Virus record (IMG/VR): IMGVR_UViG_3300024999_000029
Location: 124,001-188,000 of that record
Strand: one strand, 5' to 3'
Length of the DNA: 64,000 nt
Of this stretch, positions 1 through 29,289 are shown one piece after another (position 1 is the stretch's first letter; each line of letters begins with the position of its first letter). The notes under the pieces were generated by a model that was given only the letters and a program-made list of their open reading frames with translations, made no database searches and was not told the origin of the DNA. A program made the position numbers and the translations under genes.

Positions 1-22
1 CCTACATAAGCGTGACCGAACA

Positions 23-2089
23 ATGGTGTATAACCTTTATGATATAATAAATCCAGTATATACAGAAGTTTATGGAGGTATCAATACTCTAAATTTTAGT
101 ATTCCTTTTGTTTGTTCTGATTTTTTAACACACGAAACGATTGATAATCCAGTGGTTAGTCTAATTAAACCTTTTTATTTAGTAAAATATGATGGCGAAT
201 GGTTCATCATAGATAAGGTTGATAAGATATCAGATGATAAAAGTGTTCTTAATATAAGAACTTATTCTTTAGGATATGAACTAAAAAATAAAAACATTAG
301 AGCTTTTAAAACTGGCGTTGTTGGCAATCCAGTAAAAAACTTAACAGACACAATGAATTTATTATTAGTCAATACGAACTGGATAGTAGACCACGTAGAT
401 ACTTCTTTAGATTTACTATACAGAGCGATTGAGATATCTGATAAATCAGTATTAGATGCAATAATTAACGATGTATGTATTAAATGGGATTGTGTTCCTA
501 AATTTTCGACAGAAACTAGAAAGATATCATTTGTTGATTATAAAACCGATGGTGTCGATTTAGGATTATATATATCTGAAAATAAGTATCTGAAAAATAT
601 TCAGTTTGAGATGGAAGAAGATTCAATTTGTACTAAGCTTAAAGTTTTCGGGAAAAATAATATAAGTATAAATCAAGTGAATCCAAGTGGTCAAAATTAT
701 ATTAGTGATTTCAGTTATTTTAAGCAAGATGGGTATATGACTTCGGGTTTGAAAACTGCTCTCAATAATTATGAAACAGCCATAAGTAATAACCAAACAG
801 CGTTTCAGAATTATGTTTCTCAAAAAACAATTTTACAAACTCAACTTCTAGATAAAGAGCATGAATTAGATGTTTATAAAACAGATTCAACATTAGGACT
901 TAACGCAATACAACAAGCCAAAGATATTGCAATTAGTAATGGTCAAGATATAAACGCTACTCAAACTACAATTGAGAGTGGATTATTACAATCAGCTACT
1001 TCAAATACTGCTGTATTAAGCACTAATACATTGAGTGATAGAAATGATTATTATAATAATTGCAGTATAACCATTACTTCTGGAACTGGAGTAGGACAAA
1101 CTAAAACTATTACCGATTATGTGGCAAGTAGTAATACTATAACGGTAAATACTATTTGGGCTACAATACCTGACAATACTTCAATGTATAATATCACTAA
1201 TTCTTCTATTTTAGCTGAAGAAACTAGAAGGCAGAATATAGTTAACACAATTCAATCTGAAGTTGATTCACTTGAATCACAAATTGATGATATTAATGAT
1301 AATATTTTAATACTTAGAAATTCTATTGATATTTCAACCTATTTAACTTCCAATCAATTAAAGGAATTAAATGATTGGACTGTTGAAAAAGTTTATACAG
1401 ATAATAGTATTACAGAACAAGGGGATTCATTAGATGTTTTGCAGCAACTATTAACCGAAGCTCAAAAGCAATTATCATTACAAAATCAACCTAGATTTAA
1501 TGCTAGTATTGATTTGGTGGATTTTTGTCAGGCAGTAAATGTTGATATTTCTGAAAAAGATAGATTGAAAATTGGCAGTATAGTATTGGTTAGACATTCA
1601 AAATTGAATATAGATTTAGTTTGTAAGATTATAGAAATAGAACGTGATTATTTTAACTATAAGATTACAATAAAGATTGCTAATGAGAAAAGTATTAAGA
1701 ACGGGTTCACTCTCATAAAAGATATATTGAAAAATGTTTCTACCACCAGTGCTTTTTTATCATTAAATTCTGATTCTTGGTCTAATGGCGGTGCAGCTAA
1801 TGATTTAATATCAGATTATTTGAATAATAGTATGGATGCTACTAAGCACATGATAACTGCTGGAGTTAATAATGAAGTTCAAATTAACAACAGAGGTATA
1901 ACTATTATTGATCCTACTGAGCCTCAGTATGTACAGAGATTCGTATGTGGCTCTTGGGGTCTCAGCGAGGATTTTGGGAACTCATTCTCCGTTGGCGCTA
2001 GTAAGGGCGTCATCCACGGAGAAGTAGTTTCTGGAAAAATTTACCTAAAATCCAAGGGTAAATTTTCATCAATTAAATATAAAATATAA
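23..2089 (+). CDS. Phage minor tail (endopeptidase-like/baseplate hub) protein, N-terminal fragment of a split gene; frame is open to the left window edge
   Basis: 688-aa ORF with a typical Firmicutes prophage tail-protein architecture: N-terminal beta-rich region, central coiled coil, C-terminal NNEVQINNRGITI...GEVVSGKI. In-frame codons continue upstream of 23 (LHKRDRT). Confidence 0.75.
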   Translation: MVYNLYDIINPVYTEVYGGINTLNFSIPFVCSDFLTHETIDNPVVSLIKPFYLVKYDGEWFIIDKVDKISDDKSVLNIRTYSLGYELKNKNIRAFKTGVVGNPVKNLTDTMNLLLVNTNWIVDHVDTSLDLLYRAIEISDKSVLDAIINDVCIKWDCVPKFSTETRKISFVDYKTDGVDLGLYISENKYLKNIQFEMEEDSICTKLKVFGKNNISINQVNPSGQNYISDFSYFKQDGYMTSGLKTALNNYETAISNNQTAFQNYVSQKTILQTQLLDKEHELDVYKTDSTLGLNAIQQAKDIAISNGQDINATQTTIESGLLQSATSNTAVLSTNTLSDRNDYYNNCSITITSGTGVGQTKTITDYVASSNTITVNTIWATIPDNTSMYNITNSSILAEETRRQNIVNTIQSEVDSLESQIDDINDNILILRNSIDISTYLTSNQLKELNDWTVEKVYTDNSITEQGDSLDVLQQLLTEAQKQLSLQNQPRFNASIDLVDFCQAVNVDISEKDRLKIGSIVLVRHSKLNIDLVCKIIEIERDYFNYKITIKIANEKSIKNGFTLIKDILKNVSTTSAFLSLNSDSWSNGGAANDLISDYLNNSMDATKHMITAGVNNEVQINNRGITIIDPTEPQYVQRFVCGSWGLSEDFGNSFSVGASKGVIHGEVVSGKIYLKSKGKFSSIKYKI

Positions 2090-2106
2090 AATATAAAAAT
2101 TTTAAA

Positions 2107-2216
2107 GAGATAGATTGAGCGTAATTAACTCAATTGATAAGAGTGGGACTCCCTGTGCCTACTCTTCTTTTTATGTTTAAAAACAGGGTGAAAACACTAA
2201 CAGGGAGGAAATCTAA
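2107..2216 (+). promoter_or_regulatory. Structured 5' leader of the homing endonuclease gene (two hairpins; loop CTCCCTGT can pair with ACAGGGAG covering the SD)
   Basis: Stems attgag/ctcaat and aagagtggg/cctactctt. The loop sequence ctccctgt is complementary to acagggag at about 2200-2207, which overlaps the RBS. Confidence 0.5.
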
Positions 2217-3386
2217 ATGGGAAAATACTTTACATATACTGAAGTAAAAAACTTTATTGAAATAGAAAGCCAATCAAATTGTAAATTAATTAGTAAGGAA
2301 TATATAAAATCATCCAAAAAGATAATTATTGAATGTGCTTGTGGCGAACAATTTGAAACAACTTTAGATAGTTTTAAACGAGCAAATAAAAGACAATGTA
2401 ACAAATGTTCTAGATCGTTAATAAGTGAAAGATATAGATTAAAATATGATGATGTTAAAAACTATATTGAAATAGAAAGCAACTCTATGTGTAAATTATT
2501 GTCTGAAGAGTATATAAATTCTGGAAGACATTTAAAATTATTATGTAGGTGTGGGAATATATTTTCTAAAAGCCTAAGTAACTTTAAAAAGGGGCAATAT
2601 GTTTGTAATAAATGTAGTAAAAAAGAACAAATTAAAACATTCTTATACCCTTATGAAGATATAAGAAACTTCATAGAATTTTACAGTAATAGCGACTGTG
2701 TATTATTAACTGAAGAAAAAGATTACGTTAACACTAATAATAAAATAAAAATTAGATGTAAATGTGGGAATGTTTTTGAAACTAAATTCCAATCATTTTT
2801 ACATAAAACTAAACGCCAATGTAATGAATGTGGTGATATTTTAAGAGCAGATGGTTCAAGACTGCCATATGATTTCGTTAAAAACTTTATAGAAAATATA
2901 AAAGGATATAAATTATTATCAGATACATACATAAATTCTGGAACTAAATTAGAGGTTCAATGCGACAAAGGACACATATATGAAGTAATTTGGGAGGACA
3001 TTCAGAAAGGAAACAGATGCCCATTTTGTAAAGAAACCCGTGGCGAAAAAAGAATTGAAGAATATTTATCTTTAAATAATGTTCAGCTTAAAATAGAAAA
3101 AATATTTTTAGATTGTAGATATATTCAACCGTTACGTTTTGATTTTTATTTACCAGAACATAATGTTTTAATAGAATATCAGGGTAAACAACATTATTTT
3201 CCTGTTGATTTTGCAGGGAAAGGAGAAGAGTGGGCTAACGAACAGTTTAAAATAAACCAAATTAAAGATCAAATTAAGAGAGACTATTGTAATAACAATA
3301 ATATAAAATTGTTAGAAATACCGTATTGGGATTTTGATAATATAGAAGACATACTATCAAGCAACTTATTAAAGGAGGTGGGCTAG
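2217..3386 (+). CDS. Putative homing endonuclease: repeated Cys zinc-ribbon DNA-binding units plus C-terminal PD-(D/E)xK (Vsr/DUF559-like) nuclease
   Basis: Four CxCG..F......F......CxxC-type repeats; C-terminal LRFDFYLPEHNVLIEYQGKQHY motif; sits between two halves of a tail gene. Confidence 0.8.
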   Translation: MGKYFTYTEVKNFIEIESQSNCKLISKEYIKSSKKIIIECACGEQFETTLDSFKRANKRQCNKCSRSLISERYRLKYDDVKNYIEIESNSMCKLLSEEYINSGRHLKLLCRCGNIFSKSLSNFKKGQYVCNKCSKKEQIKTFLYPYEDIRNFIEFYSNSDCVLLTEEKDYVNTNNKIKIRCKCGNVFETKFQSFLHKTKRQCNECGDILRADGSRLPYDFVKNFIENIKGYKLLSDTYINSGTKLEVQCDKGHIYEVIWEDIQKGNRCPFCKETRGEKRIEEYLSLNNVQLKIEKIFLDCRYIQPLRFDFYLPEHNVLIEYQGKQHYFPVDFAGKGEEWANEQFKINQIKDQIKRDYCNNNNIKLLEIPYWDFDNIEDILSSNLLKEVG

Positions 3387-4946
3387 ATGAGCTTATATGT
3401 TTATAATTACACCAAAGACTTTGCCATTATCGGTGCAGATACAAGACTCTGCGGTTTAAAAGATAATTCATATTATAAAATTCATGATAATGCTTGTAAG
3501 ATTATTAGTAAACACAATAAAGTATTTACTTTTGGTGGAGATTATTTTGCTACAAATATTCTTATTGGCTTGATTAATAAAGCTGATTATGACTATGCTG
3601 AATTATATAATATCTGTAATCAGCTGGATAACGAGTATAATGTTGATAAAGATAATTATTTTATAGAGTTGTCATGGCTTGCTTATGAGAATAATAGTTA
3701 TGTCTTATATAATATTGCCACATACAATAAATATAAAATAATTAGAAGTATTCCAGAAGACAATTATATGTCTAATTTCTTTGGGGGCATTGAAACAGAA
3801 AAGGCAATTGATTATTATAATAAAAATATTAATAATTCAAACCTTATAGATTTATATAAGGATATATACAATTTTTGCTCAAATGAATATATAGGTGGAG
3901 ATTTAATATTATATGTACTCAGAGATGGCAAGTCTATTAAATCATATAAATATAGTATTTCAGAAAAATGTTACAAAATTGTTGGAAATTCAGGAAAATT
4001 CAATAAAATCGAAATGTACAATCCTACTACGAATTTACTTGATGTAGAAGTAGGTAACTATATTGGGCAGGACTCTACTAACAAACGAGGCATTCGGATT
4101 TCCAACGGATCCTTGGAAATTGTCGGAGGCTTACAATCCTCTCAACTTTCATCTGGCTTATCTACTAGCATTACTAATGCAGTGCAACTAGGTCAAGTGT
4201 ATAATAACTTGAAGTTCGATAGCGTAGATGGTATTACTGTAACAAGAAATGATAATAAATTCAAAGGAACATTTAATGCAACCGATTTAAAATTTGAAAC
4301 AAGTTCAGATAATGGAAGTACGTGGACGAAGAGATTTTACTATGATTCTACGGCTCAAAAACTTGTTATTAATGGGATAATAGATGCTCAAGATTTCAAA
4401 ATAAATGGAACAAGTATCTTGGGTGATAATAAAATTTTATCTAATTATATAGAAACCTTAGTGGTAGGTAGTAATGTAATTATGGGTGCAAATGCAACAA
4501 TATCGTGGTCGCAAGTGACAAGCAAACCAACTATTCCAACATTGCCAAATTATATTACATCAACAAAGATAACATCTACTACCATTGAAAGCCCTAGTAT
4601 TACAGGTGGAGTCATTACAGGTGGAATATTACAGACTGGAGCAACTGGAGCAAGGTTAGTTATAGGTGATAGTGACAACAATAATTCTTTAGACTTTATG
4701 AATGGAGATACTTCTTTGGGATGGATTTATTTAGATAGTTTGAATACAATGAACTACCATAATAATTATGATGTAAATTTCCATTCTGGTGGAAATATTG
4801 ATATACAAACAACACATCTATCTGATGGTACTGGTGGAGGGAATATTACAATATGGGCTACTGCTACAGGGAAAAAAGTAATTTTCAATGGAACGGTGGA
4901 TTTTTCAGGAGCCACCGTTCAGGGAGTTTATGCTAAATTTGCTTAA
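3387..4946 (+). CDS. Fusion protein: N-terminal proteasome-beta-like Ntn hydrolase domain (about aa 1-195) plus C-terminal fragment of the minor tail protein
   Basis: After Met removal the N-terminus reads S1...IIGAD17TR19, then CKII, FGGD, FFGG and NEYIGGDLILY, matching proteasome beta/HslV motif order. The C-terminal two-thirds are G/T/S-rich beta-stranded tail sequence (TKITSTTIESPSITGGVITGG). Confidence 0.7.
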   Translation: MSLYVYNYTKDFAIIGADTRLCGLKDNSYYKIHDNACKIISKHNKVFTFGGDYFATNILIGLINKADYDYAELYNICNQLDNEYNVDKDNYFIELSWLAYENNSYVLYNIATYNKYKIIRSIPEDNYMSNFFGGIETEKAIDYYNKNINNSNLIDLYKDIYNFCSNEYIGGDLILYVLRDGKSIKSYKYSISEKCYKIVGNSGKFNKIEMYNPTTNLLDVEVGNYIGQDSTNKRGIRISNGSLEIVGGLQSSQLSSGLSTSITNAVQLGQVYNNLKFDSVDGITVTRNDNKFKGTFNATDLKFETSSDNGSTWTKRFYYDSTAQKLVINGIIDAQDFKINGTSILGDNKILSNYIETLVVGSNVIMGANATISWSQVTSKPTIPTLPNYITSTKITSTTIESPSITGGVITGGILQTGATGARLVIGDSDNNNSLDFMNGDTSLGWIYLDSLNTMNYHNNYDVNFHSGGNIDIQTTHLSDGTGGGNITIWATATGKKVIFNGTVDFSGATVQGVYAKFA

Positions 4947-5560
4947 TTTTTATCTTTTAAACTTGGTATAAATATATTTTTAAAATATTTATATTCAAAA
5001 ACTAATTTTCTCTCAATTTTAATTAGTTGAGATTTATCGAATATTACTTCTTCGTTTGTTCCTTTGTAAAATAATCCTTCGCTAAATCTTGATGGATCTA
5101 CAGTTTGTTTATTGTATTTTGACACCCTCGCATATCTATTAATATCAATAGGTGTAATGTATGTTTTGTCTTCATATTCAATAAGCTCAAATGGATTTCC
5201 GTTGATTTCATACATTACATAAGTAACTTTTGGTAAATTGTTTTTATTGACGGATGGTGGGGTGTTGTATACATCACCACTGACAGTAGTATTGTCATTT
5301 GCACCCTGAGTTACAGAGGTAATCTCGATCTGACTATCTGTTTCATTAAATACAACTTTTAGTCCTGCTTTTTTAAAATCTGCAAGTTTTAAATAAGTAA
5401 ATCCATCAATATTATATCCACTAACCGCCGCTGTTTGTCCATTAATAAGTACAGGATATGGGTTTGATTTAATATTTAATTCATTAGCAGCAAATACTGC
5501 TCCAGAAAATAACATTGCTCCAGTCACTAATCCTAAGATAAATTGTTTATATTTCTTCAT
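4943..5560 (-). CDS. Secreted protein with copper-amine-oxidase-like N-terminal (stalk) domain; moron
   Basis: Signal peptide MKKYKQFILGLVTGAMLFSGAVFA; YPVLINGQ...YNIDGFTYLKLAD motif; opposite strand to the tail operon. Confidence 0.65.
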   Translation of the reverse strand: MKKYKQFILGLVTGAMLFSGAVFAANELNIKSNPYPVLINGQTAAVSGYNIDGFTYLKLADFKKAGLKVVFNETDSQIEITSVTQGANDNTTVSGDVYNTPPSVNKNNLPKVTYVMYEINGNPFELIEYEDKTYITPIDINRYARVSKYNKQTVDPSRFSEGLFYKGTNEEVIFDKSQLIKIERKLVFEYKYFKNIFIPSLKDKN

Positions 5561-5678
5561 TATAATTCCTCCAAAATTGTATGGTTATAGTTTAACCTAT
5601 TTCTAATTACATTATACTCTTTTTGGTGGAATTTGTAAACACATAAAACTAAAATATAATATGAAAGGAAGTGATAGT

Positions 5679-5819
5679 ATGGAAGAAAATAAAATAGATA
5701 AAAATGAATCAGTATATGACGCTCCTTATATGAGAGAATTTTTCAATAAAGTTTTTAAGTCTTTTGAGAAAGTTAAAGAATTAGAAGAAAGAATCACAGA
5801 ATTAGAAAAGAGGGGTTAA
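5679..5819 (+). CDS. Small hypothetical protein (46 aa, MEENKID...)
   Basis: Read by hand; SD gaaaggaagtga upstream; C-terminal coiled coil. Confidence 0.55.
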   Translation: MEENKIDKNESVYDAPYMREFFNKVFKSFEKVKELEERITELEKRG

Positions 5820-5998
5820 ATTCCCTCTTCTGATTTTCTTTTTTCGTATTCTTGAATCATATCGCAAAAAATTGAAACAGATTGTTTTGCAGATTCTTTT
5901 TGCGTATTTGCCATAATTTTATCAGAGTCTTGCCATCCTGTTTTAATTTGACTCAATGCTTTATTTTCCATGTCAGTTTTAAATTTTTTAAAATCCAT
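5816..5998 (-). CDS. Hypothetical protein (60 aa; start probably MDFKKFK)
   Basis: ORF track 5816..6046; SD aaaggagg precedes the ATG at 5998. Confidence 0.6.
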   Translation of the reverse strand: MDFKKFKTDMENKALSQIKTGWQDSDKIMANTQKESAKQSVSIFCDMIQEYEKRKSEEGI

Positions 5999-6099
5999 TG
6001 GTTCGCCTCCTTTTGTAAGATTAATCCCGATGGTTAATTGTACCACAATTTCAATAATAGGTAAATAAAAATATATAAAAAAGAAAGGATGATGATTTC

Positions 6100-6201
6100 A
6101 TGGAAGAAAATAAAATAAAGGTTGTCCAAAATGATGAACAACCCGAAGTAATATTTATAGAACAGCCTATTGAGATTACAAAACATAAGATTATTTTTTA
6201 A
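6100..6201 (+). CDS. Small hypothetical protein (33 aa, MEENKIK...)
   Basis: Read by hand; SD gaaaggatga; same first six residues as 5679..5819. Confidence 0.45.
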   Translation: MEENKIKVVQNDEQPEVIFIEQPIEITKHKIIF

Positions 6202-6317
6202 ATAACATAATGTGTATCAATAACTTTAGTTCACCATAACAAACTAAACCAAATAACTTGTATATATTGTTATAAAATGATATTATCGGAAAAACAACAT
6301 CAATAAGGAGGAAAAAT

Positions 6318-6536
6318 ATGAAATTATCACTAAATTTTGCAGATGGTACAAACTTTACTCAAGATTTAACTGAATTTCAAGAACTATTGAAAATTCAAGA
6401 ATCTGGTTCAAATGTGCTAGGGTATATTTTAGCGGGAAAAGAGAAGAATTCGACCATTACATTGAACGATACCAGTAATGGTAAGACAATTATCAAGAAA
6501 TATGATGACTTGAAATCTTTAGAAATTATGTTTTAG
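6318..6536 (+). CDS. Hypothetical moron protein (72 aa)
   Basis: SD aaggagga; own upstream promoter-like sequence; followed by a terminator. Confidence 0.65.
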   Translation: MKLSLNFADGTNFTQDLTEFQELLKIQESGSNVLGYILAGKEKNSTITLNDTSNGKTIIKKYDDLKSLEIMF

Positions 6537-6541
6537 AACTT

Positions 6542-6570
6542 AGACCTCTACTAAAAGGGGTCTTTTTTTT
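6542..6570 (+). terminator. Intrinsic terminator
   Basis: agacctct-actaaa-aggggtct followed by a T tract. Confidence 0.75.
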
Positions 6571-6616
6571 ATTTATTAATAATTTAAATATTTATTAATC
6601 ATATTAATATTTCCTC

Positions 6617-6710
6617 TTGACATATATTAGTTTTATTGATATTATCAATATAGAAAGAAATTTTATATTGATAATTTTTGTGATATAATCAAAATAAAAA
6701 TATTGATGAG
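6617..6710 (+). promoter_or_regulatory. Promoter/operator region of the XRE gene with TATTGATA/TATCAATA boxes
   Basis: ttgaca at 6617; palindrome tattgata-t-tatcaata at 6634-6650; further tattgat boxes at 6666 and 6701. Confidence 0.5.
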
Positions 6711-6718
6711 GAAACATT

Positions 6719-6940
6719 ATGCAAATTATTGTTAAAAATAAAATAGAAGAACAAGTTAAAAATTATCAGGCACGGACGGGAGCGACAAAAACTTGGATTG
6801 CAAAACAATTAAGCATGAGTAATCAAAATTTGCATAATGTTTTTCGTGCAATTAATCCTACTATTGAAACATTGATAAAGTTCTCATTATTATTAGAATG
6901 CGATGTGAAAGAATTATATACTTTCACATTGGAAAAATAA
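6719..6940 (+). CDS. XRE/Cro-like helix-turn-helix transcriptional regulator
   Basis: TKTWIAKQLSMSNQNLHNVF...PTIETLIKFSLLLECDVKEL is an HTH_XRE pattern. Confidence 0.8.
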   Translation: MQIIVKNKIEEQVKNYQARTGATKTWIAKQLSMSNQNLHNVFRAINPTIETLIKFSLLLECDVKELYTFTLEK

Positions 6941-7054
6941 TTAAAATAAATTTGTTTTATATCAATATTATATTGACAATTTGATAAAGCCATCATATAC
7001 TATGGATGCGAGGTAAATTTTACCTTACAAAAATAATGTATAGGAGGTCTTGTA

Positions 7055-7366
7055 ATGTCTAGAGAAATAAAAGAAATAAGCAATAATGAGTTTGAAAATG
7101 AATTTAAAAAGTTGAAGGGTAAATCTGTTTGTGTGGACATCTTAGGAGATGTAACTTTTTTAAAACTGATTGATAGTTTTGATATTCGACAATGTGGAGA
7201 TAAAATTACATTATGCGATTGTGAGGATGAAAGTAATATCAGTATTAAAAAATCTGCAATAGATTGTATTGTTCAAGATAAAAGAATATCCAACCTTAAA
7301 GATACACATATATTCCTGAAGAATGGATTAGAAATAAATCTACAGGGGGACGTTGAAAATGAATAA
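7055..7366 (+). CDS. Hypothetical protein
   Basis: SD aggagg; coupled to the antirepressor gene. Confidence 0.65.
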   Translation: MSREIKEISNNEFENEFKKLKGKSVCVDILGDVTFLKLIDSFDIRQCGDKITLCDCEDESNISIKKSAIDCIVQDKRISNLKDTHIFLKNGLEINLQGDVENE

Positions 7367-8165
7367 TTTAATAATAAAAGAAGTAAATTTTAACGGTGAT
7401 AATTTATTAGCAGTTAAAAACAACGATAATAAAATATATGTTGGCGTAAGTTATATTTGTAATGGTATAGGGTTATCTGAAGGACAAATGAAGAATGAAA
7501 GAAAGAAAATACAAGAAGACTTAGTTCTTTCTAAAGGGGGACGAAATTTGATCCTCCCTACAAATGGTGGCAATCAAGAAGTTTTAGGTATAGAATTAGA
7601 TTTTCTTCCATTATGGTTGGCTAAAATTTCTATCACTCCAAAGATGATAAAAGATAATCCAGCAGTGGTAAACAAACTTGTTGATTATCAGTTGAAAGCA
7701 AAAGATGTATTAGCAAATGCATTTATACATGGACAATATAACTTACCAACTACATACAAAGAAGCACTAATACAATTACTTACAGTGGTTGAGGAAAAAG
7801 AAAAGATAGAGGAACAAAATAAAGTACTTATTCCTAAAGCTGAAGGATATGATGATTTTCTGAGTGCTAAAAATGCTCAGACGATGAACGAGTGTGCCAA
7901 GGTGCTAAAAATTGGACGCAACAAATTATTCAAATTTTTGAGACAGAACGATGTATTAATGTCCAATAATTTACCATATCAAAGATTTTGTGATAGCAAG
8001 TATTTTACAGTTAGAGAAGTTCATTTTATCCGTGGAAATTATGAGTATAATGGATGCCAATGTTTGGTCGCTGCTAAAGGATTAGATTTCATACAGAAAT
8101 TGCTAAAAGAAAAAGGCTTCTGCGGAAACAGTTTAGCCCTCAATAAAAATAATGTAGCTATATAA
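7353..8165 (+). CDS. Phage antirepressor (P22_AR N-terminal domain plus KilAC/ANT C-terminal domain)
   Basis: N-terminal EVNFNGDNLLAV...LDFLPLWLAKI; C-terminal PKAEGYDDF...AKVLKIGRNKLFKFLR...PYQRF. Confidence 0.85.
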   Translation: MKMNNLIIKEVNFNGDNLLAVKNNDNKIYVGVSYICNGIGLSEGQMKNERKKIQEDLVLSKGGRNLILPTNGGNQEVLGIELDFLPLWLAKISITPKMIKDNPAVVNKLVDYQLKAKDVLANAFIHGQYNLPTTYKEALIQLLTVVEEKEKIEEQNKVLIPKAEGYDDFLSAKNAQTMNECAKVLKIGRNKLFKFLRQNDVLMSNNLPYQRFCDSKYFTVREVHFIRGNYEYNGCQCLVAAKGLDFIQKLLKEKGFCGNSLALNKNNVAI

Positions 8166-8283
8166 TAATATATATTACTTAAAATTACAACTATGACACA
8201 AATTTTTATAGAGGTAGAAGTTATTACTACCTCTTCCCAATAAAACTTTTATTTTGTATTGACAAATGTTTAAAAATAATGTA

Positions 8284-13261: not shown

Positions 13262-16200
13262 ATGTCTTACTTACCTAACAATAGAGAATTTAGAGATCCA
13301 ACAGTATTTGATGTTAGAGATTTTGCCGTTCAAAGAACAGATATAAATAAAAAAATAATAAACAATAGAATCCCTTTGGAAGAAAAGCCAGATATTATAC
13401 ATCATGTTCAAATTAGTGGATATACTGAGATATTTGATAATAGCGTACCCACGGAAAATCAATTTAAATGTGATTATACTAATGATTATCTAACTTTTAA
13501 TCCACTAAAAGAAGGAGTAGTAATACCAAGTATTAGCTATTGGGGACTTGGGAATATATTGATAAGTGCAGATAAAGTATATTTGCATAATGATAATCCA
13601 GATGCAACTATAACCTTACAAGATATGATTGACGACGGAGAGCAAGCACTTGTGGCTATGGGCGGATTAGAGAGCGTAATATCTTCTGCTACATTGCATG
13701 AAGCCAGTTTAGAGGCAGATATCGTTACAGCTACAAGCAAAGAATCAAGTTTAGAAGCAGATATTGCCACAGCTACGACGAAAAAAAGCGACCTTGATGG
13801 TTCTATATCTACAGCTACCACAACTAAGGCTAATTTAGATGGAAGTAACACAACTGCATTGGTAACTAAATCAGCTTTAGATGCATCTAATACTACTGCC
13901 AATACCACGAAAACTAATTTAGATAATAGTAATACTACTGCACTAGCAACAAAAACAGCACTAGATTTATCTAATACAACGGCTAACAATACTAAGACAA
14001 ATCTAGATAGTAGTATACTTGCAGGAGATGCATCAAAAACAAATTTAGATGCGAGTGTTATTTTAGGTAATACAAGTAAGTCTAATTTGGATTTAAGCAT
14101 TTCTACGTCTATAACTAAGAAAGCAGATTTGGATTCTAGCATATCAACAGCAACAACCAAAAAGAGTGATTTAGATGCTAGTATTTCTAACGCTAATAAT
14201 AGCAAGACTGCTTTAGATATTAGCAAAGCAAATGCTGATAATAGTAAAACCGCTTTAGATTTAAGTATAGGAACTGGAAATGCTTTAAAAACAAACTTAG
14301 ATTCAAATATTTCCACAGGAACTACTCTTAATACCAATTTAGGAAATTCTATATCTGGTGGCAATACTACTAAAACAAATTTAGATGGTTCTATTTCTAC
14401 AGCTACAACACTCAACGGCACATTAGATGGAACAATTGTTACAGCAAATACTTCAATAAGTGAACTAAATACTACAAATGACAGTTTTATTGTTTGGGAA
14501 GCGTATAATTCTACTCATACATATTATCCATTAAATAAGGTTTCATGGAATGGTAGTAGCTATATTTGTCTATCTACTTGTACTAATATACTTCCCTCAA
14601 ATAATAGTTATTTCATGTTGATTTGTGCAAAAGGAGTAGATGGAACTGGTGCAGTAATGAATATTAATTCAACTAATAGCGATATTGCTGTAGGGAATCC
14701 TACTGGAGAAGTTTTATTAACATTAAATTCAGGTACTGGTGCTTATCAGATAGTTAAATTAGATAGTAATGGGAAAATACCTTTGGCAGTTATCCCAGAT
14801 ATAGCTAAACAACAAACTTATGTTGTTACAGATTTAACAGCAAGGAATGCTCTTACAGGATTAGTAAGTGGTGATACTTGTTATTTAACAAGTAATGGAG
14901 ATTCATATATTTACAATGGTTCTACATGGGTATTAATGGCTGATGCGGATTGGGCTAATATAAGCCTCGATTGGACTAATATAGTTGGCAGACCAACTTC
15001 AAGCGTAGCTAATATTGACGATGCAGTAACTAAGAAACATAGTCATGTAAATCAAACAATATTAGATAATACAACCGCTAGTTTTTTAACAGCAGATGAA
15101 ACTAAATTAGACGGTATATCAACTGGAGCGAATAAAACTGAATCAAGCTCTACTAATGGAAATATCAAAGTAGATGGAATAGAGAAAACTGTTTATACTC
15201 ATCCGTCAACTCATAGTGCAGATATTATAGTAGATGGAACTACTAATAAAACATATACGGCAACAGAAAAGACTAAACTAAATAGTATAGTTATAGCAAC
15301 TCAAGAAGAAGCAGAATCTAGCACATCAAACACAACATTCATGACTCCGTTGCGTACAACACAATTAATAGAAAATCCAATCTACACAGCAGAAGCAACA
15401 ACAACACAACAAGTAACCTCTCTGCCATCCACCGCAATGAAATCACCTTTCGCCGCGGCAGAGTTAGAAGGTAACACTAATACTAATATAGTCACAAATA
15501 GTAATTTTGCTGACGGTACTACTGGGTGGACACCACAATTTTCAACTCTTTCGACAATAAACAATATATTATCTGTAACGGGTAATGGTATCAATTCAGC
15601 AGCTTCGACTTACCAAAATACAAACATAGATTGCGTAGAAGGTAAAAAAGTTTTCGCTAGAGTTAAATTAAGTGTTACAAACAGCAATTCAACTTTAATA
15701 GACTTACGTTTATTGGGGAGTTTAGGCGGTACTATTCAAATCGCACAGCAAACCACGCCAACAATTAATCAGGTTTATGAATTATTTGGAATAGCAACTT
15801 TAACAAGCTTTAATCTTGGCAAGGTGCAAATACGACCAGTACAGTTTTACGCAGATGCCACAACAGCAACTGGAAAAGTTATGGAAGTACAAGAAGTATT
15901 AGCAATAGATATGGGTGCAGATAGCACCAATCCACTTTACAATCTTACAGCAGACCAGATGAACGCACGGTTCGCTAACTGGTTTGATAGCACTAAAAGC
16001 GTTGGAATGCAGAGAGTAAAGAGTGTTGGGAAGAATTTGTTTGACGTAAATAGTTATAATACAAAATCGTCAACAGGTATAAAAGTTATAACTGTTGACG
16101 AAATAGCATTTACCACAACAGGTAATGCATCTGGTAGTCTATATTTTAAAATATATTCAGGATTGAGTGATTATAATACTGTTGTTAGTACAAGTGATTA

Positions 16201-19200
16201 TTATTCATCTGCTGGAAACAAAACAGTAACAACTACTACTACAAACGAAACTTTTTACAGACTTGTATTTGGTATAAATGGGAATGCACAAGATGCTAAA
16301 CTTTATTATAGGCTGAAATTAAAACCTAATACAACATATAAAGCTACTTTAAATATATCTAGTTTTTCAGCGAACTCTATAATTGTTGATAATACTATTC
16401 AAATCGAAGAAAGCTCAACGGTAACTTATGCTACTAGAGTTTACGAACCCTACACAGAATCCACAGCGTACACAACACCAGAGTTACGTAGAGTAGGCAC
16501 AGTAGCAGATACGGTGGATTTGCTTAGTGGGAGGCATACTAAATATATTAGTGATTGGCATAGTTTACAGGCAAGTGATATAACTACGCTTGGAACAACA
16601 AGAACGAACGTAGATACGCTTATAGTAGCGTTACCACTTGCTAAAGCAGCAATTACAGGGGCTACGCAAAATGTTTTTAAAGTGCCAAATTTTAATGCCT
16701 CTACTTTGTCAACTATAATAGATGACATTCAATATATAGGTCAATATGTTTATAGTGCAAGCATAAACGCAAATTTAGTTTTAGTAATTGCAAAAGGTAC
16801 GTACGCAAGCCTAGCAGCAGCACAAACAGCACTTGCAGGGACACAAATACTGTATCAACTAGCAACACCAACTACGACAAATTACCTCCCTAGTACTTTA
16901 ATAAGCGAACCAAACGGAACAATATACACAGAACCTAGCATAACTGATGTAGGTTATTACGGTACAAATATTGCTGTTGCTGACACGGATTATCCTATAA
17001 GCAGTTTAGATTGGATTAATAAAATTGATGTTGATACTGGAGCGTTTATACCTGTGGATATTGCAACATGTACCGTTGCGAGTGGTGGATTGAGTTTTAC
17101 AATTTCGACAGCTACGGTCGATGAGTGTTACGAGTATGCATATAACTACAGTACGGCATTAAGCGTAATACCTAGTTTGGCTTATAGCTATAGCACTAAC
17201 TTAAAAGCACAGGTGAATGAGACGGTTAGTGCGGTGGAGAGGTTGGACAGAAAGATAGAAGAAAAGTCGGCTAATTTAAAAATAGCTACAGAAGCAGAAG
17301 CAGAAGCTGGAACGTCAAATACTGTATTCATGACTCCACTTAGAACAACACAATTAATCGAAAACGCCACATACACAGCAGAAGCAACAACAACACAACA
17401 AGTAACCTCTCTACCATCCACAGCAATGAAATCACCTTTTGCATCAGCAGAGTTAGAAGGTAATACTAATACTAATATAGTCACAAATAGTAATTTTACA
17501 AGTACTGCTGGGTGGACACTAACCGTAGGTGCTACAGTAAGTGCAGCAAATAATGTACTGAACCTTACAGGCAGTGGCAGCAGTAGCTCTCCTCAAACCT
17601 ATCAACAGTCAATTATTCCAGTAGTAACTGGCAAAAAAATGTACATCACAGGGAGAGCTAGGGTTACAAACGCAAATTGCCAATATTTATACATAAAAAT
17701 ATCTGATGGCACTGGAACTACTATAACAGGTTCTCCTGCGGTTGTAGCTGCTCCAGTGCCAAATACGTGGTATACATTTTCGGCAATAGCAACTTGTCAA
17801 GCGTCACTGAGCGGAAATTTTAGAGTGTATTTAATGCATACCTACGTAGACGCCGCCACAGCAAGCGGAAAAGTAATGGAAGTCAAAGAAGTAATGGCAA
17901 TCGATATGGGCGTAGACAGCACCAATCCACTTTACAATCTTACAGCAGACCAGATGAACGCACGTTTTGCTAACTGGTTTGATACTACTAAATCCATTGC
18001 ACCGCAGAGAGTTAAGAGTGTTGGGAAGAATTTGTTTGATAAAAACGATATATTAATTTATGGCAAACGCTTATCTGGAACTGCAAATGGTGCAACAACA
18101 ACAGATGTGACGTATAACGTAACTGGCTATATGCGGGTAAATCCATCTAGTACTTATTGCAAGACGAATTTTGCTAGTACAGTAGCGTTTTATGATAAAA
18201 GCAAAATATTCATATCCGAAGTGTATACAAATCCTTTTACAGTTCCTGCAAATGCGATATATGCTATATCATCCGTACTGGTTGCTAATTTAGATACCGC
18301 ACAACTCGAACTCGGCTCATCCGCAACAACATACGAACCCTACACAGAATCCACAGCGTACACAACACCAGAGTTACGTAGAGTAGGCACAGTAGCAGAT
18401 ACAGTGGATTTGCTGACGGGGAAGTATGCTAAGAATATTAGTGATTGGTATAGTTTACAGGCAAGTGATATAACAGCGCTAATTACAACAGGAGTAAATG
18501 CTGATTATATTCAAACTAACGTTAGTTTTTTACCTTTGGCTAAACCATCTAATGGAACTGTGCAAAATATAATAAAAGTAGGTAATTATCCAGAAACAAC
18601 TATTGCTCTTTTTGACAGTGCAGACTCACATTGGAAATTCGTATACTCTGAAACCGAAAGAATCGTTATTATATTTCCTAAAGGCACATACGCAAGCCTA
18701 GCGGCAGCACAAGCAGCACTAGCAGGGACACAAATACTTTACCAACTAGCAGTACCAACCACCGCAAATTATCTACCTAGCAACCTAACAAGCAAGCCAA
18801 GTGGTACATTATATTTAGAGCCTAGCATAACAGATGTAGGTTACTATGGTGCTAATATTGCTATTGCAGATACGGATTATCCAATTGCAACATTAGATTT
18901 TATGAATAAAATTGATGTCGGTAATGGTACTTTTACGCTTGTAGATATTACAGCTTGTACAGTGGCTAGTGGTGGATTGAGTTTTACTATTAGCGGGGCA
19001 ACGGCTGGTGAGTATTACGAGTACGGTTATAACTATAGCACAGAGTTGAGCGTAATACCTAGTTTGAGTTATAGTTATAGTACTAATTTAAAAGCACAGG
19101 TGAATGAGACGGTTAGTGCGGTGGAGAGGTTGGAGGAAGCGTTAGACGAACTTTTTACGTCTGCCAGTAATGGGAAAACCGCTATTGCATCGGCTATTGC

Positions 19201-28095: not shown

Positions 28096-29289
28096 TTATA
28101 TTTTGATTAAAAGTGATTTTTTATTGAAACTTTGTTGTATTTCCCAATCTTTTTTATACATCCATTTATATCCACCAGACTGTTTATATTCGCCTTTACA
28201 AACTTCCGAAATATGATATGCTCCAGTTTCACTTTTTGCTTTTCCAACACTGTCATACTTATTAATTATTTCACCTGTATTTATATTTAATTGTACTACT
28301 GGGTTTGATTGTTGATCGAATTTTTTATATTTACACCAATCTAATTCATCACCTTGTTTTAAATATTTAGTAATAGTTTTTCTACTTAATTTTATTTCTT
28401 TGCTAATATCTAAAGTATTATTCATACCACTATTCCATAAATCACAGACCGATTTCACTAACGAATTACAAGCAAATTCATGACACCTTATCCAATCAAT
28501 TCTTGATAAATCAAATATATTTATTATTTCACTATCTAATATATTAGTTTTTATGTATTGTAAATTAGGCGACTGTGCATCAATAATTATATAATTTGTA
28601 ATTCCGTTTATTTTGGCAATACATTCTTTTATTTCATCATTTTCTCGTTCTTCTTTTAGAGTCCTTAATGAATTAGGAAAACTTTTTTCATAATGTTGGT
28701 TGCCGTGTACCTCAATTATAATATTTTTATTTTCAATATAAAAATCGTATATCTTAGTACCATTAAGCTTTGTATTTGTATGTTCAATGTTTTTACTCCA
28801 GCTAAAAACATGTTCTGTTGTGAATTCAATACCTAACTGAATTAAAACATTATACATAAATTTCTGGGCATAACTCACCCCGTCAGAACACTTAGGGCAA
28901 GACAAACCTCGTTTACTAATATTATTTATTGATTTGTTTATTATTATATTTTCGCATTTGTCGCATTTCCAATTCACAAATACACTACTTGCTTGAGTAT
29001 ATTTAAACCCATCATTTTTATCATGCAGCAAATTAGCTAAACTAGGATTAGTTGTCCACATATCATTAATTCCTATTTTAACTTTTTTGTTAGAGCATAT
29101 AGGACATTTACGATTGGCTTTTAAATGATATTCATCCATTTTCCCTATATATTTACATTGCAAACATTCATATTTATAGCCTTTAATAGTATGTTTCCCA
29201 TGGTTAATCCTAATTAGGTTTAATATTTTTATATTACCATTGATTACATCATTAATATTATACTTGTATTTATGTGTTATGTTTTCCAA
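28096..29289 (-). CDS. Putative homing endonuclease (zinc ribbons, PD-(D/E)xK nuclease, C-terminal NUMOD1)
   Basis: CPICSNKKV...NPSLA treble-clef pattern; YDFYIENKNIIIEVHGNQHY; PVVQLN...INKYDSVGKA...CKG.YKQSGGYKW. Confidence 0.8.
   Translation of the reverse strand: MENITHKYKYNINDVINGNIKILNLIRINHGKHTIKGYKYECLQCKYIGKMDEYHLKANRKCPICSNKKVKIGINDMWTTNPSLANLLHDKNDGFKYTQASSVFVNWKCDKCENIIINKSINNISKRGLSCPKCSDGVSYAQKFMYNVLIQLGIEFTTEHVFSWSKNIEHTNTKLNGTKIYDFYIENKNIIIEVHGNQHYEKSFPNSLRTLKEERENDEIKECIAKINGITNYIIIDAQSPNLQYIKTNILDSEIINIFDLSRIDWIRCHEFACNSLVKSVCDLWNSGMNNTLDISKEIKLSRKTITKYLKQGDELDWCKYKKFDQQSNPVVQLNINTGEIINKYDSVGKAKSETGAYHISEVCKGEYKQSGGYKWMYKKDWEIQQSFNKKSLLIKI

What the first reader, a model, noticed from the sequence alone, without database searches (positions are those of the whole stretch)
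1950..4946. Tail gene split by a homing endonuclease, with a proteasome/Connectase-like Ntn domain fused to the downstream half: candidate protein-ligation rescue system
Seen in sequence: the tail ORF ends ...GEVVSGKIYLKSKGKFSSIKYKI* (2089). A zinc-ribbon/PD-(D/E)xK endonuclease gene follows. The next ORF starts at the base immediately after the endonuclease stop. Its first ~195 aa are not tail-like, then tail sequence resumes at ...YKIVGNSGKFNKIEMY (about 3975). The two junction peptides resemble each other (KIYLKSKGKF vs KIVGNSGKF). After Met removal the extra domain reads S1-LYVYNYTKDFAIIGA-D17-T-R19, followed by CKII, FGGD, FFGG and NEYIGG. Established knowledge: that order and the D17/R19 spacing match proteasome beta/HslV Ntn hydrolases, which use the N-terminal Thr/Ser as nucleophile. 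The archaeal proteasome homologue Connectase is a transpeptidase/ligase. Homing endonucleases normally avoid destroying their target by sitting in introns or inteins. Inference: this element neutralises its own insertion post-translationally. The Ntn domain would cleave the upstream fragment near its C-terminal tag and transfer it onto itself or onto the downstream half, rebuilding one tail polypeptide. That would be a splicing-like route that is neither intron nor intein. No intron core or intein C1/HN motifs are visible, and coding sequence fills the space up to the downstream exon.
Basis: partly seen in the sequence, partly recalled or inferred. Interest (0 to 1): 0.95.

Follow-up and report, generated by a model that had tools for sequence, protein, structure and literature searches.

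The report
Fractured tail-fibre gene with proteasome-like domain
A phage tail-tip/fibre gene that is one piece in relatives is here in two pieces with a selfish endonuclease gene in the gap. The second piece starts with an apparently active proteasome-like enzyme domain that may join the pieces, but whether that joint is covalent is untested.

Summary
Tal (23..2089), a nuclease gene (2217..3386) and ORF3 (3387..4946) lie as described. Uninterrupted relatives (P0104, P0105, P0103, P0004) place the break between Tal residue 673 and ORF3 residue 198. ORF3 residues 1-197 model with high confidence as a 20S proteasome beta fold. Ser1, Asp17, the Lys33 and Gly47 equivalents and a GG pair are invariant in 76 relatives, and the domain always sits at the extreme N-terminus. 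It is probably the 'FC4' proteasome homologue noted once in 2021, with no known function.

This endonuclease did not make the split. L001, L002 and L049 have the same split, the same Tal tail peptide and the same Ntn domain, but carry an HTH/Bro-ANT cassette in the gap. The HEG is a recent arrival, flanked by a co-conversion-like tract.

The layout Tal | nuclease | Ntn-fibre recurs in about 30 loci, including cultured Psychrobacillus phage Perkons. This makes it a widespread variant of 'fractured genes', with an Ntn domain where split inteins would sit.

Covalent, Connectase-like joining is plausible but unproven. Against it, some relatives lack Ntn at the same split, have a stand-alone Ntn, or encode Ntn-fibres far from Tal.

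The parts
1..2089 (+). Upstream half of the fractured gene: Tal (tail-tip, YomG-like) protein. The ORF is called from 23 and the true start lies upstream of the window.
   Evidence: YOMG_N and phrog_6211 positions 36-631 of 1168. It is 46-53% identical to the N-terminal two thirds of the single-ORF homologues P0104 and P0103. dN/dS against L001 is 0.076.
2042..2086 (+). 15-residue C-terminal tail of Tal, lying beyond the break point (after ...SGKI).
   Evidence: It overlaps the same residues of P0104/P0105 that ORF3 198-212 matches. It is conserved in L001 and L049, which lack the HEG. Against L001 it shows 4 synonymous and 1 non-synonymous change, dN/dS 0.046.
2090..2146 (.). Spacer after the Tal stop, shared with relatives that lack the HEG.
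   Evidence: Homology to L001 and L049 runs to window 2146 and then stops.
2147..3368 (+). HEG cassette, an insert relative to L001 and L049. It holds the nuclease ORF 2217..3386, with four Zn-ribbon repeats and a PD-(D/E)xK-type core. The last 18 nt of the ORF overlap the shared ribosome-binding site of ORF3.
   Evidence: In L001 and L049 this interval is replaced by a 1.6-kb HTH/103-aa/Bro-ANT cassette.
3369..3386 (+). Ribosome-binding site (AAAGGAGGTG) of ORF3, conserved with and without the HEG.
3387..3977 (+). Proteasome-beta-type Ntn domain, ORF3 residues 1-197. Catalytic set: Ser1 after Met removal, Asp17, Lys37 (equivalent to Lys33), Gly50 (equivalent to Gly47), Glu166, Gly169-Gly170.
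   Evidence: AF2 model pLDDT 92.9. The Foldseek top 50 are all 20S beta subunits, E about 1e-8. The family profile hits proteasome beta6 of 8adn at E=2.4e-4. Invariant columns are listed. dN/dS is 0.06.
3381..3584 (+). Divergent tract next to the HEG, resembling a co-conversion tract. The crossover lies at 3585-3623.
   Evidence: All 24 mismatches between the window and L049 over 3369-8241 fall in this tract. The next 4657 nt are identical.
3978..4946 (+). Downstream half of the fractured gene: distal fibre, ORF3 residues 198-519.
   Evidence: ORF3 198-411 aligns to P0104 602-792 and ORF3 273-420 aligns to P0004 648-799 at 50% identity.

Best explanation
SHOWN:
- This is a 'fractured' central tail-fibre gene of a Firmicute siphophage or prophage. 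Relatives encode Tal plus distal fibre as one protein of 857-945 aa. Here Tal stops 15 residues past the break, and ORF3 residues 198-519 continue the fibre from the same point.
- ORF3 residues 1-197 are a proteasome-beta-type Ntn domain with an intact catalytic set.
- The domain belongs to a family that always occupies the extreme N-terminus of tail-fibre-like proteins. This is probably the 'FC4' proteasome homologue.
- The gap between the two pieces is a slot for selfish DNA. It holds a Zn-ribbon/PD-(D/E)xK homing endonuclease here, an HTH/Bro-ANT cassette in the nearest relatives, and a DUF7487-DUF559 (Vsr-like) nuclease in 29 other loci.
- In this lineage the split, the Tal tail and the Ntn domain all predate the HEG. 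The HEG arrived recently, next to a sharp recombination joint inside the Ntn gene.

INFERRED:
- The Ntn domain is an active enzyme that works at the Tal-fibre joint of an exchangeable fibre module.
- Most likely it takes Tal's constrained C-terminal tail into its substrate groove. Ser1 then cleaves the tail and retains Tal on its own N-terminus, like the amide-linked intermediate of Connectase. This would restore in protein the link that was lost in the gene.
- The nucleases exploit and reshuffle this joint. They are not part of the chemistry.
For: - Junction mapping on single-ORF homologues that share the synteny TMP-Dit-[Tal-fibre]-(minus-strand secreted protein).
- Fold and active site. Six family members also hit phrog_1040 'peptidase HslV family', and one hits Pfam Proteasome.
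- The domain starts at residue 1 in essentially all 82 clusters, and every N-terminus reads M-S. A catalytic free N-terminus would require this.
- The Tal tail and the Ntn domain are both under purifying selection (dN/dS 0.046 and 0.06).
- The HEG-less relatives L001, L002 and L049 carry an identical split.
- Mosaic joint: 24 mismatches in 3381-3584, then 4657 identical nt.
- The Tal | nuclease | Ntn-fibre layout recurs: L003, L007, L012-L014, L017, L021, Perkons, and 20 of 26 metagenome loci. The genes often overlap by ATGA.
- Chemical precedent: Connectase, which uses Ser1 or Thr1, forms an amide between its own N-terminal amine and the N-terminal fragment of its substrate (PMC7980362).
Against: - No direct evidence of any cleavage or ligation.
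- L033/L047 have the same Tal|fibre split with no Ntn domain on the adjacent fibre gene. The halves can therefore probably assemble without it.
- L040 and several proteins of about 200 aa (P0026, P0094) have the Ntn domain as a separate ORF. That does not fit self-anchoring.
- Ntn-fibre genes also sit next to helicase, primase or terminase genes, far from any Tal (L004, L009, L018, L020).
- Tal tails after the break vary from 2 to 15 residues and are poorly conserved across the family.
- The Connectase-specific features are absent.
- Isolated proteasome subunits are reported to be inactive outside the assembled ring (PMC8665760).
Confidence: 0.5

Rival explanations
1. HEG and Ntn domain form one mobile element that invaded a continuous Tal-fibre gene. 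The element cancels its own damage by Ntn-catalysed protein ligation, rebuilding one polypeptide. It would be an intein analogue encoded as separate ORFs.
For: - A nuclease gene abuts or overlaps the Ntn start in the window and in 29 other loci.
- Single-ORF homologues have one copy of the junction motif where split loci have an overlap on both halves.
- The group C nucleases are Vsr/DUF559-like. That is the superfamily found in half of the split-intein 'fractured genes' (PMC2677866).
- The window's HEG cassette brought its own diverged copy of the Ntn ribosome-binding site, start codon and first ~200 nt. Its donor therefore also had an Ntn gene immediately downstream.
Against: - L001, L002 and L049 keep the split, the tail and the Ntn domain without any HEG.
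- Two apparently unrelated nuclease families occupy the slot (hhalign probability 2%).
- Nuclease and Ntn identities are poorly correlated (r=0.20). L028 and L029 share 93% identical Ntn but only 30% identical nuclease.
- Ntn-fibres occur without a nuclease and far from Tal.
- L040 shows the nuclease decaying while the Ntn domain persists.
Confidence: 0.15
2. Non-covalent assembly. The Tal tail and the Ntn domain act only as protein-interaction modules that dock the fibre on Tal. This would resemble the element-derived tails of the mobE-split NrdA of phage Aeh1.
For: - Direct precedent: tails created by the HEG insertion are essential for assembly of split NrdA, with no splicing (PMC3045599).
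- The L033-type split works with no Ntn domain at all.
- Most phage fibres attach non-covalently (general knowledge).
- The constrained Tal tail fits a docking peptide equally well.
Against: - Ser1, Asp17, the Lys33 and Gly47 equivalents and the GG pair are invariant across 76 sequences that share only 22-36% identity.
- The domain is strictly placed at residue 1.
- Neither feature is expected of a pure docking domain. Inactive proteasome alpha-type subunits lose these residues.
Confidence: 0.25
3. The Ntn domain is a protease that does not join the halves. It could be a virion-borne hydrolase acting on the host envelope. Alternatively it could be a maturation or leader protease that trims the fibre, or itself, during assembly.
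For: - The hydrolase-type active site is intact.
- Stand-alone Ntn ORFs exist, so the domain can act in trans.
- Ntn-fibres are encoded far from Tal.
- Tail-tip proteins of Gram-positive phages often carry lytic domains; for example, the L003 tape measure protein has M23 and glucosaminidase domains.
- Self-cleaving chaperone domains (Peptidase_S74) are known in fibres, and one family member carries one.
Against: - Relatives with a continuous Tal-fibre gene have no such domain, although their synteny is the same.
- In Tal-adjacent loci the domain sits exactly at the joint, not at the distal, host-facing end.
- Isolated proteasome-type subunits are usually inactive.
Confidence: 0.2
4. The pieces are joined by a conventional route: a group I or group II intron in the RNA, or a (split) intein in the protein.
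For: A HEG sits between two halves of a gene, which is the classical setting for both.
Against: - No Rfam intron hit at E<=10 in 1500-5500.
- The interval is filled by two long ORFs under purifying selection.
- ORF3 has its own strong ribosome-binding site, which is conserved in relatives.
- No Hint or intein Pfam hit.
- The domain folds as a proteasome beta subunit, not as a HINT domain.
- The junction residues (Y after GKI; YK before IVG) do not fit intein termini.
Confidence: 0.02

Closest known systems
'Fractured genes' (Dassa et al. 2009, PMC2677866)
   Same: [quoted passage not shown] The nucleases in half of those loci are Vsr-related. The DUF7487-DUF559/MTES_1575 nucleases of 29 loci here belong to that broad class. 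The endonuclease brings its own control elements.
   Different: There, the flanks carry split-intein halves that trans-splice. Here there is no intein. The upstream half ends in a short tail, and the downstream half begins with a proteasome-like Ntn domain. The target is a structural tail gene, not a DNA-metabolism enzyme.
Genes-in-pieces nrdA of Aeromonas phage Aeh1, split by mobE (Crona et al. 2011, PMC3045599)
   Same: A free-standing HEG insertion splits a gene. Unique tails at the new C- and N-termini are essential for reassembling function.
   Different: Those tails are short and non-catalytic, and the assembly is non-covalent. Here the N-terminal 'tail' is a 197-aa enzyme domain with a conserved active site, and the same slot holds different cassettes in close relatives.
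FC4 and other Firmicute-cluster proteasome homologues (Fuchs, Alva, Lupas 2021, PMC8665760)
   Same: A proteasome-like N-terminal domain followed by C-terminal domains similar to phage tail proteins. Found in Firmicutes. No propeptide. The catalytic triad and Gly47 are conserved.
   Different: That paper gives one sentence, no reliable model, no genomic context and no function. The position at a Tal|fibre break and the link to nuclease genes are not described.
Connectase (Fuchs et al. 2021, PMC7980362)
   Same: A proteasome-fold enzyme with a Ser1 or Thr1 nucleophile. It cleaves a recognition peptide and holds the N-terminal fragment as an amide on its own N-terminus. It recombines two proteins that carry the same motif. 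This is the chemical model for a covalent joint.
   Different: Connectase lacks helices H1/H2 and has a two-helix S3/S4 insertion. It recognises KDPGA in MtrA and is confined to methanogens. The domain here keeps H1-H4, has no such insertion and has no KDPGA motif. No ligase activity is shown.
Free-standing phage HEGs with co-conversion of flanking markers (T4 seg and mob genes; reviewed in PMC2988022)
   Same: An intergenic HEG that is present or absent among near-identical genomes, with a short divergent tract beside the insertion and identical sequence beyond it.
   Different: Here the slot lies inside what is a single gene in relatives, and it adjoins an exchangeable fibre module.

Membership tests
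Proteasome-beta-type Ntn hydrolase superfamily | Alpha-beta-beta-alpha sandwich with strand and helix order S1-S6, H1-H2, S7-S10, H3-H4, S11-S12 | tested here: met
   AF2 model pLDDT 92.9, pTM 0.89, with that element order. The Foldseek PDB top 50 are all 20S beta subunits, E 2e-8 to 5e-7, TM 0.57-0.67.
Proteasome-beta-type Ntn hydrolase superfamily | Nucleophile Thr/Ser at position 1 of the mature chain, plus Asp17, Lys33 and Gly47 | tested here: met
   S2, D18, K38 and G51 (numbering that counts Met1) are invariant in 76 sequences. All N-termini read M-S. The profile aligns GADSR and the K-I-F region to proteasome beta6. The Ser129 and Ser169 equivalents are Gly.
Proteasome-beta-type Ntn hydrolase superfamily | Amide-bond hydrolase or transferase activity | not testable with these tools
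Purifying selection (dN/dS 0.06) is only indirect support.
Connectase | Loss of helices H1/H2 and a two-helix insertion between S3 and S4 that covers the active site | tested here: not met
   The model has H1 (53-65) and H2 (70-84). There are only about 4 extra residues between Asp17 and the Lys.
Connectase | KDPGA-type recognition motif in the substrate; found in methanogenic archaea | tested here: not met
   No KDPGA in the Tal tail or in ORF3. The family is found in Firmicute phages and prophages: Paenibacillus and Psychrobacillus phage Perkons.
FC4 proteasome homologue cluster (PMC8665760) | Firmicute proteasome-like domain with C-terminal phage-tail-like domains | tested here: met
   Family members hit tail-fibre and minor-tail PHROGs (phrog_6211 in 12 members, others fewer) in their C-terminal parts. 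Hosts are Firmicutes where known.
FC4 proteasome homologue cluster (PMC8665760) | Sequence clustering with the representative WP_076223917.1 | not testable with these tools
   The representative could not be fetched. The ten cluster members looked up carry no accessions.
Fractured genes (split intein + free-standing HEG) | A conserved gene broken in two with an endonuclease gene between the halves | tested here: met
   The layout recurs in 29 other loci.
Fractured genes (split intein + free-standing HEG) | Split-intein halves (Hint fold; Cys/Ser1 ... HN+Cys/Ser/Thr) at the two new termini | tested here: not met
   No Hint or intein Pfam hit. The fold is a proteasome beta subunit. The junction residues do not fit intein termini.
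Group I / group II intron | Conserved catalytic RNA core flanking the HEG | tested here: not met
   Only chance-level snoRNA and miRNA hits at E<=10 in 1500-5500.
Free-standing homing endonuclease | Nuclease ORF with DNA-binding repeats, present or absent among close relatives, with a recombination tract at the insertion | tested here: met
   PHROG homing-endonuclease hits. Absent from L001 and L049 at the same site. The mismatch tract 3381-3584 is followed by 4657 identical nt. Cleavage activity was not tested.
Vsr/DUF559-like PD-(D/E)xK nucleases | Significant profile match of the window's nuclease domain | tested here: inconclusive
   The group C nucleases hit DUF559 and MTES_1575. The window's HEG shares the D...IEY(D/Q)G..H layout in alignment. 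Its hhalign probability is only 2%, E=0.024, and it has no Pfam DUF559 hit.

The most novel reading that the evidence does not exclude
The N-terminal proteasome-like domain is a Connectase-like transpeptidase that covalently joins the two halves of the fractured tail gene.

Two routes are possible:
- It captures Tal on its own Ser1 amine after clipping off Tal's short tail.
- It exchanges the junction motif that both halves carry, giving a scarless Tal-fibre chain.

Either route would be a third route of protein 'splicing', distinct from inteins. It would be widespread in Firmicute phages, would allow fibre modules to be swapped and grafted, and would provide a new family of protein ligases.
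Probability: 0.25. Interest if true: 0.95.

Novelty: new variant of a known kind. Interest (0 to 1): 0.8.

Why it matters
Gene fragmentation by selfish endonucleases is known to be repaired in three ways: by introns, by (split) inteins, or by non-covalent tails. Here the place of the split intein is taken by a proteasome-type enzyme domain with an apparently intact active site. This holds in about 30 independent phage loci, one of them a cultured phage.

If the domain ligates, it is a new protein-joining chemistry in viruses and a source of sequence-specific ligases. If it only docks or trims, it still gives the first functional context for an orphan proteasome homologue family (FC4-like). It also identifies the Tal|fibre joint as a hotspot where nucleases and fibre modules are exchanged, which bears on how phage host-recognition modules evolve.

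Tried and rejected
- **Intron or intein:** rejected.
- **Close DNA or protein relatives in GenBank phages:** none for the window region or ORF3. Only P0003 reached Perkons.
- **Word-based search of the Ntn region alone:** found only two near-identical proteins. The exhaustive search was needed.
- **Structure prediction with the 1645-column alignment A1:** failed. It succeeded with the trimmed alignment A2.
- **Full-length ORF3 model:** uninformative (pLDDT 49.7). I could not see whether the linker lies in the active-site groove.
- **The search for related loci:** rejected A1 and A4 because no stretch of columns was conserved enough to search with.
- **Cluster look-up:** gave no accessions, so FC4 identity is unverified.
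- **Homology between the two nuclease families:** not established.
- **PDB sequence search of the HEG:** empty.
- **Junction motif in split Tal proteins:** a motif HMM finds one strong copy at the junction of every fused homologue. It finds only weak, truncated copies at the ends of split Tal proteins. 'Duplication' is better described as a 10-15-residue overlap of the two halves.
- **Perkons paper:** contains no virion proteomics for ORF185-187.
- **Terminator scan:** found nothing in 1800-5700.

Full report
**1. What is in the sequence**

- A Tal-type tail-tip gene at 23..2089. It hits YOMG_N and phrog_6211 'minor tail protein' at profile positions 36-631 of 1168.
- A 389-aa nuclease gene at 2217..3386.
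- A 519-aa ORF3 at 3387..4946, whose ATG follows the nuclease stop codon directly.

The nuclease has four Zn-ribbon repeats of about 68 aa and a C-terminal D...IEYQGKQH core. It hits PHROG families annotated as homing or intron-encoded endonucleases, the best at E=1e-90.

Rfam finds no intron in 1500-5500. Pfam finds no Hint domain.

**2. The gene really is in pieces**

Three longer homologues of Tal were found: P0104 (857 aa), P0105 (945 aa) and P0103 (909 aa).
- Tal 394-685 aligns to P0104 323-613, and ORF3 198-411 aligns to P0104 602-792.
- P0105 and P0004 behave the same way.
- P0104 reads ...AEVISGNL-IVGNTGKF... where the window has Tal ...GEVVSGKI, followed by 15 more residues and a stop, and ORF3 ...CYK-IVGNSGKF....

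The P0104 locus has the same synteny as the window: tape measure, Dit, the single Tal-fibre gene, then a minus-strand secreted-protein gene.

The break is therefore mapped to Tal residue 673 and ORF3 residue 198 (nt 3978).

Tal's 15-residue tail overlaps the stretch of P0104 that ORF3 198-212 also matches.
- In this window the tail-to-fibre similarity is weak by itself (p=0.13).
- The equivalent overlap is significant in L014, L012 and L007 and clear in Perkons.
- A motif HMM finds one strong copy at the junction in each fused protein. It finds only truncated copies at the ends of split Tal proteins.

**3. The extra domain**

An exhaustive search with ORF3 1-196 found 82 clusters at 50% identity. 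The domain starts at residue 1 in essentially all of them, in proteins of 196-889 aa. Every N-terminus begins M-S.

Across 76 aligned members (22-36% identity to the query, apart from one 93% relative) the invariant columns are S2, D18, K38, G51, G170 and G171. These correspond to Ser1, Asp17, Lys33, Gly47 and the GG of the proteasome D166-x-x-S-G-G segment. Here that segment reads E-x-I-G-G.

Supporting results:
- The family profile hits a proteasome beta6 chain at E=2.4e-4.
- An AlphaFold2 model built on a 14-sequence alignment has pLDDT 92.9.
- Its 50 best PDB matches are all 20S beta subunits.
- Six members hit the PHROG 'peptidase HslV family', and one hits Pfam Proteasome.
- The C-terminal parts of members hit tail-fibre and minor-tail PHROGs.

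The literature has one prior mention. [quoted passage not shown] They give no trusted model and no function. I could not fetch its representative to confirm identity with this family.

The domain is not a Connectase by that family's own hallmarks. It keeps helices H1/H2, it has no S3/S4 insertion, and no KDPGA motif is present.

**4. The HEG did not make this split**

L001/L002 have a fibre 84% identical to ORF3 and a Tal 90% identical to the window's. They have the same Tal stop and the same tail peptide, with one conservative change. They also have the same 57-nt spacer, the same ribosome-binding site and the same Ntn domain. Between them lies a 1.6-kb HTH/103-aa/Bro-ANT cassette, a paralogue of window 6587-8190. 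The HEG cassette is window 2147-3368.

L049 has a fibre 99% identical to ORF3 and carries the same HTH/Bro-ANT cassette.
- All 24 window-versus-L049 mismatches over 3369-8241 fall in 3381-3584. The next 4657 nt are identical.
- L049 equals L001 up to position 3623.

That sharp joint beside the HEG looks like a recent recombination with a co-conversion tract. It also shows that the HEG's donor had an Ntn gene immediately downstream.

The tail peptide is not junk. Against L001 it shows 4 synonymous changes and 1 non-synonymous change (dN/dS 0.046). Tal as a whole gives 0.076 and the Ntn domain 0.06.

**5. The arrangement is widespread**

In a second subgroup of the family, a DUF7487 plus DUF559/MTES_1575 (Vsr-like) nuclease gene lies between Tal and the Ntn-fibre gene. 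This holds in:
- L003, L007/L008, L012, L013, L014, L017 and L021;
- the cultured Psychrobacillus phage Perkons (ORF187, ORF186, ORF185);
- 20 of 26 further metagenome loci.

The three genes often overlap by ATGA.

Exceptions are informative.
- L040 keeps only the last ~60 codons of the nuclease. It has the Ntn domain as a separate 209-aa ORF followed by a separate fibre ORF.
- L033/L047/L010 have a fibre gene that starts at the junction motif 10 nt after the Tal stop, with no Ntn domain. A second, Ntn-bearing fibre gene follows it.
- L004, L009, L018 and L020 have Ntn-fibre genes beside helicase, primase or terminase genes. The Paenibacillus loci L015/L016 also have them away from any Tal.

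Modules are exchanged at the joint. L028 and L029 share 93% identical Ntn regions but only 49% identical Tal and 30% identical nuclease. Across loci the nuclease-to-Ntn identity correlation is 0.20.

**6. How it probably works**

The architecture above is shown. The mechanism is inference.

Three facts argue for a working enzyme placed at the Tal-fibre joint:
- the catalytic set is invariant;
- the domain always has a free N-terminus;
- it sits exactly where relatives have a peptide bond.

Connectase shows that a proteasome-fold enzyme with Ser1 can cleave a recognition peptide and hold the upstream fragment as a stable amide on its own N-terminus. It can also recombine two proteins that carry the same motif. 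On that basis I favour capture of Tal's constrained tail by the Ntn domain, possibly covalent. I rate covalent joining at about 0.25.

The main rivals are these:
- Pure docking, as with the element-derived tails of mobE-split NrdA.
- A protease role unrelated to joining.

The Ntn-less split, the stand-alone Ntn ORFs and the Tal-distant Ntn-fibres all weigh against an obligatory self-ligation.

**7. Comparison and verdict**

The closest known systems are the 'fractured genes' of Dassa et al., which have split inteins, and the Aeh1 nrdA genes-in-pieces, which have short non-catalytic tails. This case is a new variant of that kind, with a proteasome-like enzyme domain at the break.

The ligation idea remains open and can be tested directly in Perkons or by co-expression.

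Noticed in passing
window 6587-8190; L001 6349-7982; L049 263-1896: An HTH / 103-aa / Bro-N-ANT cassette lies downstream of the fibre in the window. A diverged second copy of it (70-86% nt identity) fills the Tal|Ntn slot in L001 and L049. That copy has its own promoter-like TTGACA...TATAAT and a hairpin terminator. The cassette behaves as a mobile moron.
   Followed up: partly
window 4943-5560 (-): A 205-aa protein with a signal-peptide-like N-terminus is encoded on the opposite strand and overlaps the ORF3 stop by 4 nt. A gene in this position, flagged weakly as Cu_amine_oxidN1, follows the fibre gene in L001, L009, L019, L020 and L021. The window copy has no Pfam hit.
   Followed up: partly
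window 28096-29289 (-): A second 397-aa ORF whose C-terminus resembles the HEG nuclease core (26% identity over 95 aa). It also hits the PADLOC 'HEase' model. It is probably another free-standing homing endonuclease in the same genome.
   Followed up: partly
window 13262-20194 (+): A very large ORF of 2310 aa lies downstream of the tail module. Relatives carry YomF_N-type giant proteins (L002, L021) in a similar position. It was not analysed.
   Followed up: no
L033 118-5625 (also L047, L010): Tal is followed 10 nt later by a 302-aa fibre gene that starts (GTG) right at the junction motif and has no Ntn domain. A second, Ntn-bearing fibre follows, whose residues 203-504 are 49% identical to the first fibre. 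The two alternative fibres may compete for one Tal.
   Followed up: partly
L040 1218-3441: A decayed nuclease (only the last ~60 codons are readable) lies upstream of a stand-alone 209-aa Ntn ORF. That ORF overlaps a separate fibre ORF in another frame. This is either a three-piece arrangement or a frameshift.
   Followed up: partly
L020 1-17827: An Ntn-fibre gene sits in a 21.8-kb element with Toprim, AEP primase, an RdRP-like 1026-aa protein, NYN, an HNH endonuclease and an integrase. No tail genes are in view. It could be a satellite-like element that carries its own fibre.
   Followed up: no
L028 about 5000 and L029 about 4555: The Ntn ORFs appear to start with a non-canonical codon: they read I-S-C-A directly after the nuclease stop. 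The two loci share 93% identical Ntn regions although their Tal proteins are 49% identical.
   Followed up: partly
L022 (Psychrobacillus phage Perkons, MT325768, ORF185-187): A cultured 137-kb temperate siphophage has the full Tal | DUF7487 nuclease | Ntn-fibre arrangement, annotated only as tail protein, hypothetical protein and putative tail fiber protein. According to its 2026 paper, its terminase also carries an intein/HEG domain.
   Followed up: partly
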